Shown: positions 4,335-58,900 of the stretch, in pieces
How positions within the stretch are numbered: the first letter of the stretch is position 1
Layout: each line of letters starts with the position of its first letter
Assembly: GCF_003918875.1 (NCBI RefSeq)
Contig: NW_025766103.1
Location: 930,001 to 994,000 of the forward strand
Reading direction: 5' to 3'
DNA length: 64,000 nucleotides
DNA from: Haliotis rubra
Lineage: Eukaryota
Notes under the pieces: generated by a model
Database searches by the model: none
What the model was told of the DNA's origin: nothing
What the model saw: the letters and a program-made list of their open reading frames with translations, nothing else
Program-made: the position numbers and the translations under genes

Positions 4335-4595
4335 ATTGGTTGGTTGGTTGGTTGGTTGGTTGGTTGGCTGGTTGTCTACCGCAGCAGTATTACAGCAATG
4401 TGGCAGTGGTCTGTAAATAATCGAGGCTGGACCAGACAATCCAGTGATCAACAGCATGATCATCGGTCTACTTAATTGGGATGTGATGTCATGTATGAAC
4501 TAAGTGAGCGAGTCTGACCACCCGATCCCGTTACTCGCCTCTTACGACAAGCATGGTTTGATGAAGACCAATTCTAACCCGGTTCTTCATGGGTC
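4335..4595 (-). mobile_element. SINE with non-tRNA head (RUDI/V-SINE-like), (AACC)n tail
   Basis: Head GACCCATGAAGAACCGGGTTAGAATTGGTCTTCA; body matches SINEs at 12686, 38436 and 56644; TSD TGAAATTATGG at 4324-4334 and 4596-4606. Family name is from recall. Confidence 0.8.
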
Positions 4596-12296: not shown

Positions 12297-12798
12297 TTAA
12301 TTAAAGCAGCATCGTGGATGACCTAACGAACATGTATTTTGGTTAGGTGATAGTTTTGACCTCCTAGCACTGGCGCCGAGTTATCACTTTGTAGTTGTGT
12401 TCCCAATAAATACATAGTTTTAGCGAGGTTGATGGACATCAACGGCATATGAAAATATTTATGGGGAAGAGTTAAATGGTGATGAAAGTTTGCTTAACTG
12501 GAACTAATGATTTCTATAAATAAGTATTTGGCTACTGTCAACATATATCATGAATGAAAGACAAAAAGAAATCTGGTTGACTCAGACTGAAAACCCATTA
12601 TGAATTATCGACTATTGGACAAGGGACATCACAAAACACAACACAATGGTGCTGTTATGTGCTGTGCTCTTGTTCTATGTGGACTAGATCCAAGTTAGAA
12701 TTGATCTTCAGTAACCCATGCTTGTCGTAAGAGGCGACTAACAAGATCGGGTGGTCTAGCTCGCTGACTTGGTTGACACATGTCATAGTATCCCAGTT

Positions 12799-12857
12799 GG
12801 CACCCGTGAAGAGCCACCTCCTCGTGGTGGGTGCTGGGTAACGCTAAGCGCTCTACA
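12799..12857 (+). ncRNA. HDV-like ribozyme, second copy (two mismatches in P2)
   Basis: P1, P3, L3, P1.1 and J4/2 are identical to the 1832-1890 copy; P2 = UGAAGAGCC/CGCUCUACA. Confidence 0.78.
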
Positions 12858-13349
12858 ACCCCCCGTTGTGGACCCGGGGGTATGTTTGGACCACCAACCC
12901 GTTTCCCGTGGGTTGCGCCCCTGTGTCGGTGGAGGACGGGAGTCTGGTGGTTGAGGGCACTGGGAGCCTGGAACCGTGTTCCTTTTGCCCATCACACCAC
13001 TTCGCCCCTTACTTCACCTAGACGGGTGGTTGAATGGGCCCGATTCAATCAATTGGCTGGTCACGCCACGCCCTGTGCATAGTGAATATTATTATTGCAC
13101 ATTTTTACTATTTGGTCTTGGTTATTTGAAATTTCACTACACAAATTAACAATATATTTCATTGAGTCCTATGCCAGAATGCGGTGGCTCATGGGCCAAT
13201 CTGGTTGTTCCTCTGGATTAACTGCAGTATACCACTCCTGTAACCCTTTTGTGTAAGTATGCTGGAACACCGCTTACGTATGACATCACCCTTGTTGGGG
13301 CTCCATGGCGGGCAGGGAACAGGTTTGCTGAACCAATATACATTTCAAC

Positions 13350-13568
13350 ATGGGTAAACACAATCCCAAAAACACAAAACGTCAACTTTCAGAATCTGAT
13401 TCTGAACTTGATTCTGATGAAGATGAAATTGTTTCCAAATTAATATTTATTCCGAAAGGGATACTTGGCCACGCTTTCTTGTTCTGGAAGCAAAAGGTGA
13501 GTGCACCCTTACTTTCTATTCACCATTTCTGTTGGAAAAGGGACTACAAGGTAAAGCCGGTGAATTGA
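13350..13568 (+). pseudogene. ORF1 N-terminal remnant of a related LINE subfamily
   Basis: MGKHNPKNTKRQLSESDSELDSDEDE, then frameshifted WPRFLVLE and GKGLQGKAGELK, paralleling WPCF-LIE and SKGIQGIAGEVK of ORF1 at 1307. Confidence 0.75.
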
Positions 13569-14154
13569 AAGACTAGTTTTACATTTATATAGCTGTGATA
13601 CTCTAGTATATTTACTGTCCTTCGATGACAGGTTTTTACGTTATACATTTATTGATTTGAATATTGATATAAACTGTCATGATATGGCTGCAATATTGCC
13701 GATGTGACGTTAAATTTTAACTCACTCACTAGTATCCCAGTTGCGTCAATGGATGCTCATTAGCCAAGCGGATAAGTGATCAAATTGTGCACTTGGTGTG
13801 ACAAGCATGAAATTTGGCATTATTGTAGCTTACACCCTTCTTATTAAATAAAGATCGAGTGGCCTCGCAGATATTTTTTAATGTTCATATTTTGTGGGGG
13901 AAAAGTGAAAAAAATATTTTTTTCCACTATTTTCGTCATAACTTTTTGAAAAGTCCTCCAATTCTCATAAATCATATATCAAACTGTAGGACCTTCATAG
14001 CTGGTAGTTTTTCATCTATACATGTCTTTCTGTCTTTGACGGTTAGGTCTACGGAATTCAGTTATATCATAACTGCCCGAAAATGGGAAATTTGATGGAC
14101 ATTTTTCAAAATGGCCACCATATAGACTACATCAGTGAAATACGCATTTGGTCT

Positions 14155-29189: not shown

Positions 29190-29877
29190 GTGAGTAAGTG
29201 AGTGAGTTAAAATTTAACGTCACATCGGCAATATTACAGCCATATCGTGGCGAGAACGTTTGACATTGAAATGAAATATGTGTATATTATAAAAAACCTA
29301 CCGACGAAGGACAGTAAAACAACTAGAATATCACAATTAGAATTAAAACTAGCGTGGAAAGTTTAAAACTAATAGCACTATTGGGACAATACAATATAAA
29401 AACAGGCTAGAGATCGCCAACAACAGAAGGTAGATCACCATACTAGGGACCATGGGGACTTACAGTACCTTTGCTACCTGCATGGTCCCTAGGTGGATTT
29501 ACACCATCCCTTCAGCCGTTGGCGATTATAAGAAATGTTAGCCAAAATTAAAATAACAAGAATACTACGTTTAAAAATCCTGGTAAGTTTAAATTGACCT
29601 TCAAAGTTTTGGGACTTACGTACCCTCTCAGGGGGACAATAATTTTACGATACTTCAACCCCCCTTGAGGGTACAGCCACTAACAATCTCAGTTACTAAT
29701 CAAAACTACCAATCATTAAAACACATCTATCTACAGAACATATTTATCAAAATTCATTAATTAAATCAATTTCTTTTAAAAAAAGCAAGAATTAAATGAA
29801 GATGAACAGTATTAAAAAGATCCTTAACAGTTTTAACATTGAAATATTTATCCCTTAGGATGGAGAATTCAACACAG
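29190..29877 (-). mobile_element. 5'-truncated I-group LINE (ORF2 tail + 3'UTR); duplicate at 49390-50076
   Basis: Minus frame CVEFSILRDKYFNVKTVKDLFNTV matches the ORF end in 47141-47422; (CTCA)n tail; degenerate TSD TCACAWCTTGTAA. Confidence 0.88.
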
Positions 29878-30145
29878 TTCACAACTTGTAAACATTCCCT
29901 AAACAATTATCTCATTAAGTTGCTAGCACTGTTTTCGGATATTCATCTAATGACGACAGTAATTTGGTTTGCTTAATGTCTTATATGTTTGTTTAGCCAG
30001 TCAAAATACACGTAAATCTGGTTGTGTTTATTTTACCAGTAACGATGTGGCGTACTCAATCAAGGATAAAGGGAAGGAGAGAGTGGTTTTGAAGTCGTTA
30101 AGACACTATTATTGTGTCACATTTGTCCATTAAAGTCTTTCATGT

Positions 30146-38300: not shown

Positions 38301-38435
38301 TTGTGTTTCCTATAAATACATTGGTTCACTCATACTGAAAACCCATTATGAATTATCGACAACTGGACAAGGGACATCACAAGACACGACACATTGGTGC
38401 TGTTATGTGTGCTGTGCTTTTGTTCTGCGTTGACT

Positions 38436-38669
38436 AGATCCGGGTTAGTACTGATCTTCAGTAACTCATGCTTGCCGTAAGACGCGACTATCGGGATAGG
38501 GTGGTCAGGCTCGCTCACTGGGCTGACACATGTCATCGTATCCCAACTGCGTAAATCGATGTTCATGCTGTTGATCCTTGGATTGTCTGGCCCAGACTCG
38601 ATTATTTACAGACCGCCACCATACAGCTGGAATATTGCTGAGTGCGGCGTAAAGTTAAACTCACTCACT
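38436..38669 (+). mobile_element. RUDI/V-like SINE, 5'-truncated; duplicate at 56644-56877
   Basis: Matches the reverse complement of 4335-4595; tail GCTGGAATATTGCTGAGTGCGGCGT..(CTCA)n. Confidence 0.87.
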
Positions 38670-47962: not shown

Positions 47963-50900
47963 CTCAACATGTCATGTGCCTTGGATTCCTACTACGAAAG
48001 CACTGCTGTCTCACTATTCCATTCACCAAATATATCGTATTCGTGCGAGTCAGTGAAAACACTTGGTTACGCCTGAGGTTTGGCTGCAACATGACAGACA
48101 GAAATCATTACAACTCACTCACACTATATAGCATAACAATACATACTGAACAAGAAATCATGAATGTGCGTTAAGATTAAAGTAACTGCTGCCGATAGCT
48201 CTATCGGCTGTTAAACTCTTCACCACCTCTACCATTCACTATGCTGTTACACTGTGAAGTCTGACCCATATGGGGTTATCGCACATTAAGACACAAATTA
48301 TTGCACCTTTTAATTTGCCTGCAGTCAAAGCGGCTATTTACGAGTCTCTGGCTGCCAAGTCGCTCGGCAAGATGCCTCCCTGCAGTCAACTTCCGACACC
48401 AATTTGCGCACAATATGAAGCCAATTTCTCATTTGCCTGGTTCACCGACCCCTTAATATGGTCACTGTCATAACTGATCGTCTTTGATCAGCTGAGTGGG
48501 TAGTGGGATTTATGCAACGTGCTAAAGTACAAGTGAAGTCACACAGTTTTTAGCCCATATCCTGTCTGTGGTAGTTGCAGCGATACAAGCATTCAAAGTA
48601 CCTACTCCTGATGTTCTAAGAAGGTGACCTACCAGATCACCAATGTGCATATTGGTGATTAACTTCTCCCCGAAACAATATCTAAGGTTTCAAGAACAAT
48701 ACATAACGAAACAAACTTGCAGTGAGTTAGATTCTTGAGCGGATGTCTGAATGGTAGCATTTAGAAGAATAAGCAAAATGTGTTACAATTGACCAAAGCT
48801 CTACGATGCTACGATGCGACAATGTGACTTTGGTGTTAAGATAGTTAGGGCCTGACTCACTCCGGAGATTAATCCATACTGGCTTTCTGTTAATACGGGA
48901 ATTTTTATTATTCACAATGAAATGTAACGTATTATTATAATTCATGTCTGTTTAAGTAAATATAGTATATAATAATGCATTTGTGACAATAAAACAATAC
49001 TAAAAATATATAATCATTCATAAAGTCATTGTGATTACTTTTGTATTTCGAAGCGTCAAATTGAGCATGAAAAGTGTTTATGTTCTTCTCTCCCGTACAG
49101 GAAACTGGTATTCCCCATTGATAGTCATTGATGATACCAGTTCTCTTCCACATCCTCGACGTGAGCATTGAACACGACACAATTAGACCATGCCCGATGC
49201 CTCTTTCATGCTGTGGGTTCGAATCCCCACATGGGCACAATGTGTGAAGCCCATTTCTGGTGTCCCCCGCCCTGATGTTGCTGGAATATTGCTAAAAAGC
49301 GGCGTAAAACCAAACTCAGTCAGTCAGTCAGTCCTTCACGCTGTTTTAATGAGAGTCACATCTTGTATATAACTTTATTCATCTTGTAAGTGAGTAAGTG
49401 AGTGAGTTAAAATTTAACGTCACATCGGCAATATTACAGCCATATCGTGGCGAGAACGTTTGACATTGAAATGAAATATGTGTATATTATAAAAAACCTA
49501 CCGACGAAGGACAGTAAAACAACTAGAATATCACAATAAGAATTAAAACTAGCGTGGAAAGTTTAAAACTAATAGCACTATTGGGACAATACAATATAAA
49601 AACAGGCTAGAGATCGCCAACAACAGAAGGTAGATCACCATACTAGGGACCATGGGGACTTACAGTACCTTTGCTACCTGCATGGTCCCTAGGTGGATTT
49701 ACACCATCCCTTCAGCCGTTGGCGATTATAAGAAATGTTAGCCAAAATTAAAATAACAAGAATACTACGTTTAAAAATCCTGGTAAGTTTAAATTGACCT
49801 TCAAAGTTTTGGGACTTACGTACCCTCTCAGGGGGACAATAATTTTACGATACTTCAACCCCCCTTGAGGGTACAGCCACTAACAATCTCAGTTTCTAAT
49901 CAAAACTACCAATCATTAAAACACATCTATCTACAGAACATATTTATCAAAATTCATTAATTAAATCAATTTCTTTTAAAAAAGCAAGAATTAAATGAAG
50001 ATGAACAGTATTAAAAAGATCCTTAACAGTTTTAACATTGAAATATTTATCCCTTAGGATGGAGAATTCAACACAGTTCACAACTTGTAAACATTCCCTA
50101 AACAATTATCTCATTAAGTTGCTAGCACTGTTTTCGGATATTCATCTAATGACGACAGTAATTTAGTTTGCTGAATGTCTTATATGTTTGTTTAGCCAGT
50201 CAAAATACACGTAAATCCGGTTGTGTTTATTTTACCAGTAACGATGTGGCGTACTCAATCAAGGATAAAGGGAAGGAGAGAGTGGTTTTGAAGTCGTTAA
50301 GACACTATTATTGTGTCACATTTGTCCATTAAAGTCTTTCATGTGTTGACTGTAAATGGAACAGTCAGTGATATAACCAATGCTTAATCAAAAGGCGTTA
50401 CTTATACTAGTTCGAAACGTAAGACCAAATATTTATTGAAATATAGGACCCGATGTTTAATTGAAAAATAACACCATGATTAGCAAAAATTATGATGCAT
50501 TAGAACGAAATACCTTCACAAAAACGTGCAAAATGTTCTCTGACCTGTCAACCATTTCGAAAAGGGACGAGATAAGTCAAAAGGAGACCATGTTTTGGAC
50601 TGGCAAATCGTAAAATCCAAGTGCGTTCCTGTGTTGGTGCTGCTGATTTTTCTGAACTTCCAGATGATTGCGTTTACTCTGACAACGTCACTCAGGCGTG
50701 ATGAGATTCCCCTTCTCCTGATGATGGATAGAAGCTTTATGAAGGGCTGTATATACAACAAAGTGGAAGATTTCCTCGCCGTTGTCTTGAATGCGTCATG
50801 TGAATAACTGATGATCTTTACCCGCTGGACCAAGTGATGCTGGACTGTTGGTGCGCGATTGCAGGACAGTAGTCTATCTGGCACGATCCAGATACATGTT

Positions 50901-52780: not shown

Positions 52781-55548
52781 GCTATATTGATCTAATTACG
52801 AAAAAACACTACAGATTTGCCAAGTGAAAAGCTGAAGTTTATATCAGTGCACACAGCGTAGTAATGTACAAATTATTCTTACTAATTCCAGTAGTTCTGT
52901 TCTGTTTTTGCGATGGCTTCATTAGGTCTTTTATGTCCTTGTAGGAAGCTGGAAGATGTGGGTATATAACGAATGAACGCATCCGAGATTGAACTATAAT
53001 ATCGGACATATAGACTTCATGCAGTACTGAAATACATCCACGAATAGAGGTACGTGCAGTTCTGCGTGTCCTTATTTTGAAGCAGCGAGACCTTTTTTTC
53101 ATTTCCATTCATCTTCCGTGGATCTAACCTCTAAGGTACCTAACCACTGATGCCACAATACTGGCAATTGGTAGGTCTGAAGTTGGTATAAATGCATTAT
53201 TCTTACATGATTTGTTTTGTATAAGTACTGTAAGTCCCCATGGTCCCTAGTTTGGTGATCTACCTTCAGTTGTTGGCGATCTTTAGCCAGTTTTTATATT
53301 GTATTGTCCAAATAGTGCTATTAGTTTTAGTTTTCCACACTAGGTTTAGTTGAAATTGTGATATTCTAGTTGTTTTACTGTCCTTCGTCGACAGGTTTTT
53401 ATAGCATACATCTATTCCATTTCGGTGTCACATGTGTTCTCGTCACGATATGGCTGAAATATTGCCGATGTGACGTTAAATAATAACTCACTCACTCATG
53501 ATTTGTTTTGTATGTTGAAAGTAAATAATGAACAAAATACATTTATGTAACACTTACGTTGTATGCATGCATAAGACTTTTTACCTTGCAAACCGGTTAC
53601 AGCTCTCGAGGCTTTCAATGTAAAAAATTAAGGTGCATTTCATAGGTCTCGGTTAAGCAATATTACCTTGGAGAGTTGAAGATCACGTCTGCCTTTTTCC
53701 GAAAATATATAATGTGTCATGGAGGAGATTTTCAGGTTTTGGAAATCTCATCAGACATAAGCTTCCTGAAGCGTTCGGCAACATAGCCTATGACACTGTC
53801 TGCGACCAACATGACCCTTTCAGTAGCCTTTTACGGCGTTTTGTATTGCAGGTGACATATTGATAACGGAAGTGATGGGAGACGGCTTTGAAGAACATCA
53901 AGTAAACGACCCCATCATTGGTATTAAGTAACTATGCAGAAATTAACACTACAAAGCACCCACTTGCTAGGTGTCTCCATTAATGCAAGCAAATTGAGGC
54001 AATTATATCATTCGTCCGTCCCCAGACAGCATAGAGTTCTTTTGTGATGTATACAAGGGAAATCGAATTTGTCAGACATTATGAGGTCCAATTTCAGGGT
54101 TGGACATACTGTCCTACTGTGTCTGCCCGTCTCCTTGTATGCGCCCATGTGGCTTCTTAGTGTCCATGGGGCGGATAGTGAAAGGAGCTTTTATATTGCC
54201 GTGCTGCAGAAAAGTTCTTGGTATGATAGTCATTAACAAAGTAGTTGTGAGGAAATTAATATACTCATTTTCTGATGAGACTTTGTCGTCCAAGAATGCT
54301 GTGATAATTTACAGTGATTTGTGTTGCATGCTGTCTGTTTAATTGTGGTCACTTCGGATTGTCTGGCTTCACATCGTTGTACCCTACTGTTTGTATATGT
54401 CAAATTTTACATCAGCTTGACTAATATACCTGCAATATCAAGTCGGGGGAATCACAAGCTGGCCTGCGCTGCATGATGTCTGTTTAACCGTGGTCACCTA
54501 CCTACCTACCCACAGACACACCAACCTACATAACTACCTACCTACCTACCCAAACACCTACATACCTACCTACCCAAACACCTACCTACCTACCTATCCA
54601 CAGACACACCAACGTACCTACCTACCTACCCAAACACCTACCTACCTACCTTTCCAAACACCTTAATCAATAAGTTGCGCTAAGTACCAATACAGCTACG
54701 AATGCCACATACAAATCTATCTCTGTGAATCTCTCTCAATGAAACAATTTTGTTTGTTTGGTATGATTCTTATTTCCCAGACCTATCTGTTTTTAGAAAT
54801 TGACATGAGGCAAATTGAATGTGTGAGACATTAAGAGAGCCAATTTCAGGGTAAGACTCTTGTCTCTGTAGTCGACGACGGCACAGGCCGTAAAACGTGT
54901 TTCATTGCCTTCTTTCAGGTCAGTAAGTAATCGTCGTGTAAATGTATTCACAGTCGTCGTCAGACTTTATGACCAAATTACATGAACTGTTTGAAGACAC
55001 ATATTCTGTAAAGAATTAACGATTCATAGGTTTATCTACGTGTGAGCTGTATGTGTTCATGTTGCCCACGAAAACACATCAAACTGCCATATAGAATGTA
55101 TTTAAAGTAGTTTGTGATGTACCTTTTTTAACGCACACAAATAAACACTGAAATGGAGCTATCATCACTGAGAATGAAGGTGCAAGGGACTCTTGGCACT
55201 GAGATAAATTAATGTTAAAGGCTTTTCATGCTTTAAAGTATGTACATTACATCTTGATTGATATAGCTGGAATATTGCGGAGTGCGGCGTTAAACAATAA
55301 CCAAACATATTGACTCTTCTGGAAATACGACTAATACTATTACGACTTCGCTGAAATACAGGTGATAGGCATTTGTCTGTTTCGTTTTAAATTGGTTCAA
55401 TGATTAGTCGCTTCTCAACGGTTATTCTCCGTTAAACAGCTCCTTACAGATGTAAAGGAGATGAAAAATAACATAAATCGATTGCAATTTCAATGTGAGT
55501 CGGCAGAAAACTTACATTAACTTGAATTGTACCCTCTTTAAACAATTC

Positions 55549-55978: not shown

Positions 55979-58900
55979 CTCTTTAAACAATTCCTTGCAG
56001 ATGTCTTTAAAAAGAGAACATAATATATATATATATATATTTTTTTTCGTTGGCATAATACGTACATTAACGTGAACAAATTCTCTTTGGTAAGAAAACA
56101 CAAGAGAAATGTACAAACATTACATTATAAGCTATTCATTCATTTATGCCTTTGTTGTAGCGCAGCTGGGTTGAAATGTGAATTCTACGTTTGTGGCTCG
56201 GTGAGGTACAACATCTTCTGTGGCAAGCTGTATGATGTATATACATCTTGCTTTGTTAATGAAAGTTCCCGTACGTCTTTTCATAAGCTTTATACCGAAA
56301 CCATTATATGAACGTATGAGCAGGCACTCATTCAGATGAATTCGAATGTGTATCCGATTCAGCTTAAGGACACAATACCTCTACCGAGGACTTACAACAG
56401 ACATAATAGTATTACTTAAACCATCATCTTGGATGACCTAACGAACATCTATTTTGGTTAGGTGATAGTTTTCATCCCCTAGCACTGACGCCGAGTTATC
56501 ACATTGTAGTTGTGTTTCCTATAAATACATTGGTTCACTCATACTGAAAACCCATTATGAATTATCGACAACTGGACAAGGGACATGACAAGACACGACA
56601 CATTGGTGCTGTTATGTGTGCTGTGCTTTGTTCTGTGTTGACTAGATCCGGGTTAGAACTGATCTTTAGTAACTCATGCTTGTCGTAAGACGCGACAATC
56701 GAGATAGGGTGGTAAGGCTCGCTCACTGGGCTGACACATGTCATCGTATCCCAACTGCGTAGATCGATGTTCATGCTGTTGATCCCTGGATTGTCTGGTC
56801 CAGACTCGATTATTTACAGACCGCCACCATATAGCTGGAATATTGCTGAGTGCGGCGTAAAATTAAACTCACTCACTGCATAGTCCATCCAATCATCCGG
56901 AAGTCCACTATGACAACACCATCCATGCGTGAGGAGGCCCCAAACGATACGGTTCTACACAAACGCTTAATGAAGAGTTATACACACAGAAAAGTGACTT
57001 ATCGTTGGAGTTGCACTATATGTTAGATGTCATTAATAATTTCTCTCTGCAGGCACTCATTTGTTTTGTTTATATTTGATAAGAAATAAAACCACGAAGA
57101 AGTGAGTGAATGGATATTGCTTAACGCGCATCAGCAAGAAAATGTAATATGTTTTAAGCTGAAAAATATTAAAATAATGTTGAAAATCAGTCCTATACCA
57201 CATTGAAGGGTAAAATAACTTATTTACGATTTAAAATTCTATATTTTTTTCATACAGTTTTATTTCTTTTAAATATTCTAAAATCAAGTAATTGGAAACA
57301 TTTCTCCATGAACAAGGTATGAGGACAAATATTTAAAAGATGTACATCCTATTTCAGGAAAACAAATGTGCTTGACCTCAACCGTAACCTATAACAGCTA
57401 TTATGTCATATTAATGTAATCTTACACTGATGGGGGTCTTCCTGGCACGTCTTTTTAACTCACCTAGTCTGTAATTTGTGTCGCTAAATGTGTCAGAAAT
57501 AGCTTCCTCCTAATGATGGACATATGTTGTTGATACGAAATTTATGCTTACCGATGCAAAGGTTATACTATGTATTAAGGATACCTACATTTATATTGGA
57601 ACTAAGCATATGTAATGTTTTCCATAATGCTTATCGTAACCTGAAAAAAAATGTGATAATGGTTGCTAGACATGTTTAGTTATACACGACACAAAATTTG
57701 TGTTAAAACTCACCACTATTCACAAAGGGCTCACATTTTTAGTTGCCAGTATAATGTTACTAGTCTTAGACTAGTCTTGTTAGATTTGCCCTTGATGAAA
57801 GAATATCATCGGTTCCAATATTCTTGCCATATGTGAGGAAAGCATTGATGAACGTATCGGTCATGTCCATGACACATGAAAACGAAGATATGTGTTCATG
57901 TTGTATGAAATGCACAAACACTACACGTATAGAGCAAGTCTGAACTCAACGTTTGCTGTTCACAATAACACAATGTGTATTCAGCAAACATTGGTTGAAG
58001 ATTATTGAGGCTATAATGTAACCCCAGGGATATCTAGCTTTTTAATCAAATGAGCTCTTTTTGAAAAAGTAGTTCAAAGTCAGATGCTGGGGATTCCTGA
58101 ATAAACAGGCAATGAAAGGATCTGTTGCTGTCAAACCAATATGTTAAGGTAGTCACGACCACAGGATAGCCATCCATAGAGAATCGATTGAAATAACAAA
58201 TGCCTCAAGGCAAATGCTAGCACTTAATTTTATGAAGCTACACAATGTGCTACCTTTCGGTTTGCCATGAACGAGTTCAAACGAAATGAATATGCTAAAC
58301 GTTGTTACACCTCGTACAACTTATGTAAAATGTTCTGATGGAGCAGATGTTTGATAAAAAATGGGCCTCTTTCAGAAATTGAGTAGCCTGGGGCATAGTG
58401 TGCCTCATCTGTTGTAAAGGAAAACATTTCTGTGTCCCCTCATAGTTTTACATTTGGGTGATCTCTTACAAAGATGTGAAATAACCTGTGTATATTGATG
58501 ACGGATGTTGAGCATTGTCCTCATCCTTGGTCTGAAGTTACAATGCAGAAGTTATATTAACGCGTTGATGGCTTGAGGCTTAAGGTCTTGGTATCCATTC
58601 TGGAACTTTTCAGTACCTTTTTTTGGACAGATCCGAATGCATTCACTTTTGGCGTTTAGCCGCCGTTTGAAGGTACTAGAATACCATGTTGTCCAAGAGC
58701 TCTATGTAATGTTTTCTATTGTCATCATGCCATCGAGGTGCTCAACTTAAATACTACACAGATATAACCGGCGTAGTCTTGACGTCTGTTCAGCTTAACG
58801 AAATATTCACCTCCATTAAAATTGAGGAGTGAAATAGATGGGGTGTCTTCTCTGAGCTTTCAGTCTTTTAGAAGCCAAACAGGATCATCTAACTTCCATC

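What the first reader, a model, noticed from the sequence alone, without database searches (positions are those of the whole stretch)
12786..13742. TSD-flanked 931-bp bipartite mini-element beginning exactly at the predicted cleavage site
Seen: the left TSD (TAGTATCCCAGTT) ends at 12798 and the insert starts at ribozyme G1 (12799; one G is ambiguous). It keeps the 5'UTR, an ORF1 stub and the last about 160 bp of the LINE, and lacks everything else. Inference: the integrated cDNA copied a self-cleaved RNA, which is genomic evidence that the ribozyme worked in vivo. The ribozyme head plus LINE tail may form a promoter-less non-autonomous family. Its ORF1 stub differs markedly from the 1307 ORF1 while the ribozyme core is identical, implying selection on the RNA.
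Basis: partly seen in the sequence, partly recalled or inferred. Interest (0 to 1): 0.78.

Follow-up and report, generated by a model that had tools for sequence, protein, structure and literature searches.

The report
Internally deleted ribozyme-headed LINE copy
This is one dead, 931-base copy of a 6.1-kb abalone-type jumping gene (a LINE) that has lost its middle. Like its full-length relatives, it starts exactly at the cut site of a small self-cutting RNA. It has no sister copies, so it is an ordinary one-off and not a new family of parasitic mini-elements.

Summary
TAGTATCCCAGTT occurs twice in the window, flanking a 931-bp insert at 12799-13729. Two uninterrupted paralogues of the host repeat carry that sequence once. 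The insert is LINE nt 1-775 (58-nt P4-less HDV-like ribozyme, 5'UTR, frameshifted ORF1 stub) joined by a 2-nt overlap (AC, 13572-13573) to the last 158 nt of a ~6.1-kb APE/RT/RNase H LINE.

The cleavage inference is supported. The Rfam model starts at 12799, the base the TSD defines. About 35 independent copies begin within 1 nt of G1 with unrelated upstream flanks. Three full-length copies have 13-14-bp TSDs abutting G1.

The non-autonomous-family idea is not supported: the junction is single-copy in the 1.38-Gb genome. Whether about 5.1 kb was lost during reverse transcription or after insertion cannot be decided.

"Selection on the ribozyme" is only partly supported. P2 covaries, but the ribozyme is no better conserved than the next ~200 nt, and ORF1 is simply the fastest-evolving part.

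All the concepts are published: ribozyme-processed LINE 5' ends, a P4-less ribozyme in abalone, R2 SIDEs, NARTc and LP-SINEs. This scan has already found the same ribozyme on other DNA of this genome.

The parts
12574..12785 (.). Left part of the host repeat (about 245 bp, SINE-like) into which the element inserted
   Evidence: The reconstructed empty site aligns over q14-256 to window 38322-38566 and 56531-56774 at 85-86%.
12786..12798 (.). Left target-site duplication TAGTATCCCAGTT
   Evidence: It is present once in the uninserted paralogues.
12799..12856 (+). 58-nt P4-less HDV-like ribozyme. P1 is 12799-12805 with 12829-12835. P2 is 12808-12814 with 12850-12856. P3 is 12816-12818 with 12826-12828. 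P1.1 is 12820-12821 with 12836-12837. The putative catalytic C is at 12844. This copy has an A-A mismatch in P2 at 12855.
   Evidence: Rfam RF02682 scores 29.2 bits (E=0.0012) and RF00094 scores 23.5 bits. Both are below their gathering scores, and the alignments start at 12799 and 12797. Across 37 copies, 97.4% of cells are paired against 35-49% when the partners are slid, and 2 P2 pairs show compensatory changes.
12857..13205 (+). Conserved 5' leader (LINE nt 59-407) shared by several subfamilies
   Evidence: Most genome hits end at nt 404-408 or 420. Column identity is 0.89-0.94 over nt 59-250.
13206..13349 (+). Subfamily-specific part of the 5'UTR
   Evidence: It matches only the C2484-type and L002-4 copies.
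13350..13573 (+). ORF1 stub. The ATG is at 13350, a frameshift lies before 13463, and the conserved frame 13463-13573 reads TWPRFLVLE...GKAGELKD. A TAG follows at the junction.
   Evidence: Translations. tblastn gives 86% to L054, about 40% to L057/L059/L062 and 61% over 18 aa to the window copy at 1890.
13572..13573 (+). Deletion junction. The two bases AC are shared by the ORF1 side and the tail side (2-nt microhomology). About 5.1 kb of LINE is missing.
   Evidence: ORF1 homology ends at 13573. Tail homology starts at 13572. The junction is unique in the genome.
13572..13729 (+). Last 158 nt of the LINE 3'UTR, ending CTCACTCAC
   Evidence: 83% to the tails of full-length copies L057/59/60/62, and 92-96% to subfamily B (L033-L036, L038), which is the 3' part of the same LINE including RNase H.
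13730..13742 (.). Right target-site duplication TAGTATCCCAGTT
13743..13760 (.). Continuation of the host repeat

Best explanation
The 931-bp insert is a single, dead, internally deleted copy of a ~6.1-kb I-group LINE. That LINE has a gag-like ORF1 and an ORF2 with APE endonuclease, reverse transcriptase and RNase H. Its RNA begins with a 58-nt P4-less HDV-like ribozyme.

Proposed mechanism:
1. The LINE is transcribed, probably as part of a longer transcript. The ribozyme cuts 5' of G1 and so sets the RNA 5' end (inferred).
2. Target-primed reverse transcription started on the 3' tail inside a copy of a short host repeat. The cDNA reached G1, and the insertion created a 13-bp TSD. The TSD, the empty site and the exact G1 start are shown.
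3. About 5.1 kb is missing, from the ORF1 codons for ...GELKD to 158 nt before the 3' end, at a junction with a 2-nt overlap. This was one event.

The data cannot date the deletion. I lean slightly (about 55:45) to an ordinary genomic deletion after a full-length insertion over a reverse-transcriptase template jump during insertion. Either way the copy is non-coding and decayed: about 14% diverged from its nearest relatives, frameshifted, and with a P2 mismatch. It founded no family.
For: TSD and empty site.

Ribozyme: the Rfam covariance-model hit starts at the very base that the TSD marks as the first of the insert. The double-pseudoknot pairing holds in 97.4% of cells across 37 copies against 35-49% for slid controls. 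P2 shows AU<->GC compensatory changes in 9 sequences and GC<->AU in 2. C46, A48 and A49 are invariant.

5' ends: 37 copies, about 35 independent events, begin within 1 nt of G1. The only shared upstream flank belongs to a segmental triplicate of 10 kb or more.

Full-length copies: L057, L060 and L062 run head to tail over 6.06-6.12 kb and have 14-, 13- and 13-bp TSDs abutting G1.

Domains: Exo_endo_phos, RVT_1 and RNase_H.

Junction anatomy.

Uniqueness: only this locus spans the junction in a 101-nt DNA search and in a 23-nt pattern search with up to 3 mismatches. No other scored head copy has a tail within 1.9 kb in the same orientation.

Other rearranged copies exist. L010 has a deletion of about 1.27 kb, and 5'-truncated tails of 274, 440 and more than 700 bp lie in the window.
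Against: Both Rfam scores are below the gathering thresholds (29.2 against 44, and 23.5 against 50). Genome DNA searches score only the 40 best of many candidates, so a strongly diverged sister copy could have been missed. The three parts have their best matches in different sets of copies (head 88-90%, ORF1 86%, tail 92-96%). That could mean a chimera of two RNAs, which would favour a template jump. It could equally reflect the far larger number of tails available for comparison.
Confidence: 0.85

Rival explanations
1. The deletion arose during insertion. The reverse transcriptase copied the last 158 nt and then jumped, at a 2-nt overlap, to ORF1 nt ~775 of the same or of another LINE RNA. 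It then ran on to the ribozyme-cut 5' end. On this reading the mini-element was born as a 931-bp insertion.
For: Both termini are exact and TSD-flanked. The junction overlap is short. The head/ORF1 part and the tail have their best matches in different subfamilies. The family is visibly mosaic: L057 and L060 are 99% identical over the last 1.3 kb but 55-75% in the 5' half, which suggests frequent template switching or recombination. Template jumps by LINE reverse transcriptases are documented for R2 (PMC3414825).
Against: A 2-nt overlap is equally typical of end-joining deletions. The subfamily mismatch may be a sampling effect. No second example of this junction exists.
Confidence: 0.4
2. It is a member, or the founder, of a promoter-less non-autonomous family (ribozyme head plus LINE tail) that is mobilised in trans, like R2 SIDEs, NARTc or LP-SINEs.
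For: It keeps the two parts thought to be sufficient for such elements: a 5' ribozyme and a 3' tail. Such families exist elsewhere (PMC3414825, PMC3383444), and LINE-headed SINEs are described in Haliotis (PMC4758252).
Against: The junction is unique in the 1.38-Gb assembly. The whole-element search found no second head+stub+tail copy. The 2-mismatch pattern hit is an unrelated ORF1 stretch. The copy is about 14% diverged from its nearest relatives and has a weakened P2.
Confidence: 0.04
3. The uniform 5' end at G1 reflects a transcription start site set by an internal promoter, not ribozyme cleavage. The HDV-like fold would then be inactive or serve another role.
For: Full-length copies of any LINE family share one 5' end. 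Both Rfam scores are below their gathering thresholds. In L1Tc the same 77 nt act as both promoter and ribozyme (PMC3383444).
Against: The covariance model places position 1 on the TSD-defined first base without knowing the boundary. The core sequence is HDV-like, the putative catalytic C is invariant and P2 covaries. A P4-less HDV-like ribozyme has been reported from the abalone Haliotis discus (Webb and Luptak 2011, as cited in PMC3774820). No untemplated extra 5' bases are seen at the three TSD-defined junctions.
Confidence: 0.08

Closest known systems
HDV-like ribozyme-terminated non-LTR retrotransposons (R2, R4, Dong, Baggins, RTE, L1Tc; Eickbush and Eickbush 2010; Ruminski et al. 2011, cited in PMC3774820; review PMC6765202)
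   Same: A double-pseudoknot ribozyme forms the first bases of the element and cleavage defines the RNA 5' end. Copies have conserved downstream and unrelated upstream sequence, which is the criterion named in PMC6765202.
   Different: Here the host is an RNase H-bearing I-group LINE of a gastropod and the ribozyme lacks P4. Activity was not tested here.
Minimal (P4-less) HDV-like ribozymes (Riccitelli et al. 2014, as cited in 10.1101/2023.06.13.544163; the Haliotis discus example of Webb and Luptak 2011, as cited in PMC3774820)
   Same: P1, P1.1, P2, P3 and the putative catalytic C are kept, and only a few nucleotides stand in place of P4.
   Different: Nothing essential. This looks like the abalone example already reported. 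I could not read the primary paper.
R2 SIDEs (Short Internally Deleted Elements; Eickbush and Eickbush 2012, PMC3414825)
   Same: The architecture matches: the 5' ribozyme of a LINE joined by an internal deletion to the LINE 3' end.
   Different: SIDEs are multi-copy and propagate. This junction is single-copy, and the element is dispersed rather than rDNA-specific.
NARTc / L1Tc of Trypanosoma cruzi (PMC3383444, PMC3185411)
   Same: A truncated non-autonomous derivative shares the ribozyme-bearing 5' end with its LINE.
   Different: NARTc is an abundant family, and its 77-nt head is also a demonstrated promoter. Neither is shown here.
LP-SINEs of gastropods and bivalves, including Haliotis (Matetovici et al. 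2016, PMC4758252)
   Same: They are TSD-flanked short elements whose head derives from the 5' end of a Nimb-type LINE 5'UTR.
   Different: LP-SINEs are families that share only about 70 bp of head and have their own body. This copy keeps 775 nt of LINE 5' sequence including an ORF1 stub. I did not test whether the LP head equals the ribozyme.

Membership tests
HDV-like self-cleaving ribozyme | Nested double pseudoknot (P1, P1.1, P2, P3) with the cleavage site immediately 5' of P1 | tested here: met
   19 pairs are 97.4% paired across 37 copies, against 35-49% for slid controls. P1 starts at the first base of the insert.
HDV-like self-cleaving ribozyme | Conserved catalytic cytosine in J4/2 (the C75 equivalent) | tested here: met
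   C46 (12844), A48 and A49 are invariant in 37 copies. They align to the GCUAAG of RF02682. The assignment rests on alignment only.
HDV-like self-cleaving ribozyme | Score at or above the Rfam gathering threshold | tested here: not met
   RF02682 scores 29.2 against 44, and RF00094 scores 23.5 against 50. There were no hits at gathering level. The shortfall is expected for a P4-less variant.
HDV-like self-cleaving ribozyme | Covariation that supports the helices | tested here: inconclusive
   Two P2 pairs show compensatory changes (11 cells; 0 of 500 shuffles reach the observed cells or score). P1, P3 and P1.1 are nearly invariant, and all sequences belong to one family.
HDV-like self-cleaving ribozyme | Self-scission that yields a 5'-OH product | not testable with these tools
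   It needs an in vitro transcription and cleavage assay.
I-group (RNase H-bearing) non-LTR retrotransposon | ORF2 with APE endonuclease, reverse transcriptase and RNase H, plus a gag-like ORF1 | tested here: met
   Pfam finds Exo_endo_phos(_2), RVT_1 and RNase_H in full-length relatives. ORF1 carries Cys/His motifs. The clade (Nimb, I or other) was not resolved by phylogeny.
TPRT insertion of a LINE | A target-site duplication flanking the exact element ends, with an empty site elsewhere | tested here: met
   A 13-bp TSD, paralogous empty sites, and 13-14-bp TSDs in three full-length copies.
SIDE-like / NARTc-like non-autonomous family | Several copies share the same internal junction at different sites | tested here: not met
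   Only this locus spans the junction.
SIDE-like / NARTc-like non-autonomous family | 5' ribozyme plus 3' end of the partner LINE | tested here: met
   Ribozyme at 12799-12856 and the 158-nt LINE tail at 13572-13729.

The most novel reading that the evidence does not exclude
The copy is a snapshot of how ribozyme-headed non-autonomous elements (SIDE-like or LP-SINE-like) are born in I-group LINEs. On this reading, a reverse-transcriptase template jump fused the self-cleaving head to the 3' recognition tail in one step, and the product was in principle mobilisable even though it left no surviving progeny.
Probability: 0.12. Interest if true: 0.45.

Novelty: new member of a known kind. Interest (0 to 1): 0.27.

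Why it matters
It matters little on its own. It is one more clean genomic footprint showing that this LINE family's RNA ends at the HDV-like cleavage site. The family-wide data give the stronger version of that argument: about 35 independent 5' junctions at G1 and three TSD-bounded full-length copies. The copy also shows that head-plus-tail deletion derivatives, the raw material for SIDE-like or NARTc-like parasites, do arise in I-group LINEs of molluscs. The principle itself is published: ribozyme-processed LINE 5' ends, a P4-less ribozyme in abalone, and non-autonomous elements made by internal deletion. This scan has also noted the ribozyme many times on other DNA of this genome.

Tried and rejected
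1. Non-autonomous family. I ran a junction DNA search (101 nt), a 23-nt pattern search with up to 3 mismatches, and a whole-element search. Only this locus matched. The 2-mismatch hit (C2363, L044) lies in ORF1 of another LINE copy and has no tail after it.

2. About 10-nt microhomology at the junction. This was suggested by BLAST ends at 13564 and 13573. A base-by-base comparison cut it to a certain 2 nt (AC) plus patchy similarity to one tail subfamily.

3. The tail as a SINE or a foreign module. Rejected. The 92-96% matches (L033-L042) are 3' parts of the same LINE, including RNase H, and are 84% identical to full-length copies over 1.3 kb. The other tails in the window are 5'-truncated LINE copies.

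4. L002-L004, which share upstream sequence and have A at position 1, as uncleaved or 5'-transduced copies. Rejected. They are segmental duplicates of 10 kb or more.

5. Linking the ORF1 type and the tail type on single full-length elements through coordinate tables. Inconclusive. Only 100 of 369 pattern hits are listed, and no more genome sequence could be fetched.

7. Special conservation of the ribozyme relative to the rest of the leader. Not found.

Full report
**Observation**

The window is G000:C1213:930001-994000 of a 1.38-Gb eukaryotic assembly. Earlier notes of this scan call it an abalone genome. I did not verify the species.

TAGTATCCCAGTT lies at 12786-12798 and 13730-13742. These are the only two matches in 64 kb even with one mismatch allowed, and 0 of 100 dinucleotide shuffles gave two matches. 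A G follows both copies, so the duplication is 13 or 14 bp.

I tested the duplication with a paralogous empty site. With 12799-13742 removed, the flanks align without a break to two other copies of a ~245-bp repeat (38322-38566 and 56531-56774, 85-86% identity). Those copies carry the TSD homologue once. The insert is therefore a genuine TSD-bounded insertion into a copy of another repeat.

**Anatomy of the insert**

- Nt 1-407 (12799-13205) match thousands of candidate places in the genome (6583 first-look candidates). The best are 88-90% identical.
- Nt 402-775 match a smaller set (72 candidates, best 86%). That homology stops at 13573.
- From 13572 the sequence is the last 158 nt of the LINE, ending CTCACTCAC.
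- ORF1 relatives continue ...GAAAGAC|GTTACAAG. LINE tails read ...|ACTAGTTTTA. The only certain overlap at the junction is therefore AC at 13572-13573. An apparent 10-nt microhomology was a BLAST extension artefact.
- The ORF1 stub starts at ATG 13350 and is frameshifted before 13463. It then reads TWPRFLVLE...GKAGELKD in the family's conserved frame, followed by a TAG created at the junction.

**The parent element**

Four loci carry head and tail 6.06-6.12 kb apart: L057 1878-7937, L060 1771-7891, L059 1869-7975 and L062 1876-7997. Their ORF2 pieces hit Exo_endo_phos, RVT_1 and RNase_H. ORF1 is gag-like with Cys/His motifs. This is an RNase H-bearing I-group LINE. I did not resolve the clade.

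The tail matches of 92-96% (L033-L042) are not a SINE. They are the 3' 1.3 kb of another subfamily of the same LINE. About 5.1 kb is missing from the mini-element relative to L057.

**The ribozyme**

Rfam finds nothing at gathering level. A permissive scan gives RF02682 (HDV ribozyme from F. prausnitzii; 29.2 bits, E=0.0012) over 12799-12855 and RF00094 (23.5 bits) from 12797. Model position 1 falls on the TSD-defined first base.

By hand the 58 nt fold as follows:

| Helix | Nucleotides | Pairs |
|---|---|---|
| P1 | 1-7 / 31-37 | 7 bp, with G1-U37 |
| P2 | 10-16 / 52-58 | 7 bp |
| P3 | 18-20 / 28-30 | 3 bp |
| P1.1 | 22-23 / 38-39 | 2 bp |

The L3 and J1.1/4 sequences are almost those of genomic HDV. 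The fold has C44-G45 where P4 would be, and C46-U47-A48-A49 as J4/2.

On 37 copies this structure is paired in 97.4% of cells, against 35-49% when the partners are slid. Two P2 pairs show compensatory changes: AU<->GC in 9 sequences and GC<->AU in 2. C46, A48 and A49 never vary. Position 51 varies freely, which argues against a 3-bp P4. This copy has A57, which gives an A-A mismatch in P2.

A P4-less HDV-like ribozyme has been reported from the abalone Haliotis discus (Webb and Luptak 2011, as cited in PMC3774820). Minimal P4-less forms are a recognised subclass (10.1101/2023.06.13.544163).

**5' junctions**

Among 37 distinct copies, all start within one base of G1. The 150-nt upstream flanks share nothing, with one exception: L054, L055 and L056, which turned out to be segmental duplicates of 10 kb or more. 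That leaves about 35 independent events.

| Copy | TSD abutting G1 | Length |
|---|---|---|
| L057 | CTGTTAACAAAACA | 14 bp |
| L060 | TATAACCCCTGTA | 13 bp |
| L062 | TACATTAGTTACA | 13 bp |

In L060 and L062 the base after the right-hand TSD is not G, so G1 belongs to the element.

It also matches the published signature of ribozyme-headed retrotransposons, which is conserved downstream and differing upstream sequence (PMC6765202). The residual alternative is that G1 is simply a transcription start site. Sequence alone cannot exclude that.

**Is it a family?**

No. A 101-nt query across the junction finds only this locus end to end; all other hits start at the tail. With up to 3 mismatches it has 13 matches, against 4 for the reversed control. 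The 2-mismatch hit lies in ORF1 of another LINE and has no tail after it.

The whole-element query found no second head+stub+tail copy. None of 25 other head copies has a tail within 1.9 kb in the same orientation.

Other rearranged copies do exist. L010 has an internal deletion of about 1.27 kb, and the window holds 5'-truncated tails of 274, 440 and more than 700 bp.

Caveat: the DNA searches score only the 40 best candidates. Further genome sequence could not be fetched.

**When was the middle lost?**

A template jump during reverse transcription and a later genomic deletion both predict exact ends, a TSD and a short overlap.

Hints for a jump:
- The parts have their best matches in different subfamilies.
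- The family is plainly mosaic. L057 and L060 are 99% identical over the last 1.3 kb but 55-75% in the 5' half.

Against reading much into that: tails vastly outnumber heads, so a closer tail relative is expected.

I rate post-insertion deletion at about 55% and a jump at about 40-45%. An orthologous locus in another abalone would settle it.

**Selection on the RNA**

The head is 80-92% identical between subfamilies, while the ORF1 stub is about 40% identical in amino acids.

The ribozyme, however, is not the special part. Mean pairwise column identity is 0.93 for nt 1-58 and 0.89-0.94 for nt 59-250. That sample was chosen by similarity to the head, which biases it towards conservation.

Along full-length pairs, the first 300 nt (90-92%) are as conserved as the RT core, while ORF1 is the least conserved part at 49-63%. 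Both constraint on the whole ~280-nt leader and module exchange between subfamilies would explain this. The specific evidence for RNA structure is the P2 covariation, plus one further hairpin at nt ~229-253 with AU<->UA changes.

**Comparison with known systems and verdict**

The architecture equals that of R2 SIDEs (PMC3414825) and resembles NARTc/L1Tc (PMC3383444). Haliotis also has described LP-SINEs with Nimb-LINE-derived heads (PMC4758252). This copy fails the defining test of those families, which is multiple copies sharing one junction.

It is an ordinary internally deleted LINE copy. Its exact G1 start adds one data point to an already strong, and already published, case for ribozyme-defined LINE 5' ends.

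Noticed in passing
L057:1878-7937 vs L060:1771-7891; L053 (window copy at 1890 extended): Full-length LINE copies are mosaic. The last 1.3 kb is 99% identical, the RT 84-89%, the APE 70-75%, ORF1 55-61% and the first 300 nt 92%. This suggests recombination or template switching between subfamilies, and a strongly constrained ~280-nt 5' leader.
   Followed up: partly
window 13027-13051 (LINE nt ~229-253): A 9-bp hairpin in the conserved leader downstream of the ribozyme shows compensatory AU<->UA (26 vs 7) and CG<->UA changes among 34 copies. Its function is unknown.
   Followed up: partly
L002/L003/L004 (= L054/L055/L056; G000 C2788, C2087, C2431): A LINE 5' fragment lies inside a segmental duplication of 10 kb or more, present at least three times at 92-96% identity. 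Its ribozyme has A at position 1 and A31, which weakens both ends of P1.
   Followed up: partly
window 29197-30100 vs 49397-50300, and 35234 region vs 53357 region: Two pairs of near-identical duplicates (99.3-99.4% over 815-917 bp) lie about 18-20 kb apart within the window, so a recent local segmental duplication is likely. Each pair carries a 5'-truncated LINE tail. The 274-bp copy at 53357 has a 17-bp TSD, CATGATTTGTTTTGTAT.
   Followed up: no
L010 (G000:C2400:565234-568642): This is another internally deleted LINE copy. LINE nt ~1434 is joined to nt ~2700, with the head intact at G1.
   Followed up: no
L057:900-1180 and L059:866-1152 (minus strand): A second, inverted LINE head (nt 1-282) lies about 700 bp upstream of the full-length head in two independent loci, in a head-to-head arrangement.
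   Followed up: no
window 12574-12798 + 13743-13760; also 38322-38566, 56531-56774, 4456-4586: The host of the insertion is a ~245-bp interspersed repeat. I did not examine this.
   Followed up: no
L044:1502-1523 (G000:C2363:169619-169641): An ORF1 stretch of another LINE copy (..IVAELRD*) matches the deletion junction at 21 of 22 bases and contains the tail's first 11 bases, ACTAGTTTTAC. This is probably coincidence.
   Followed up: yes
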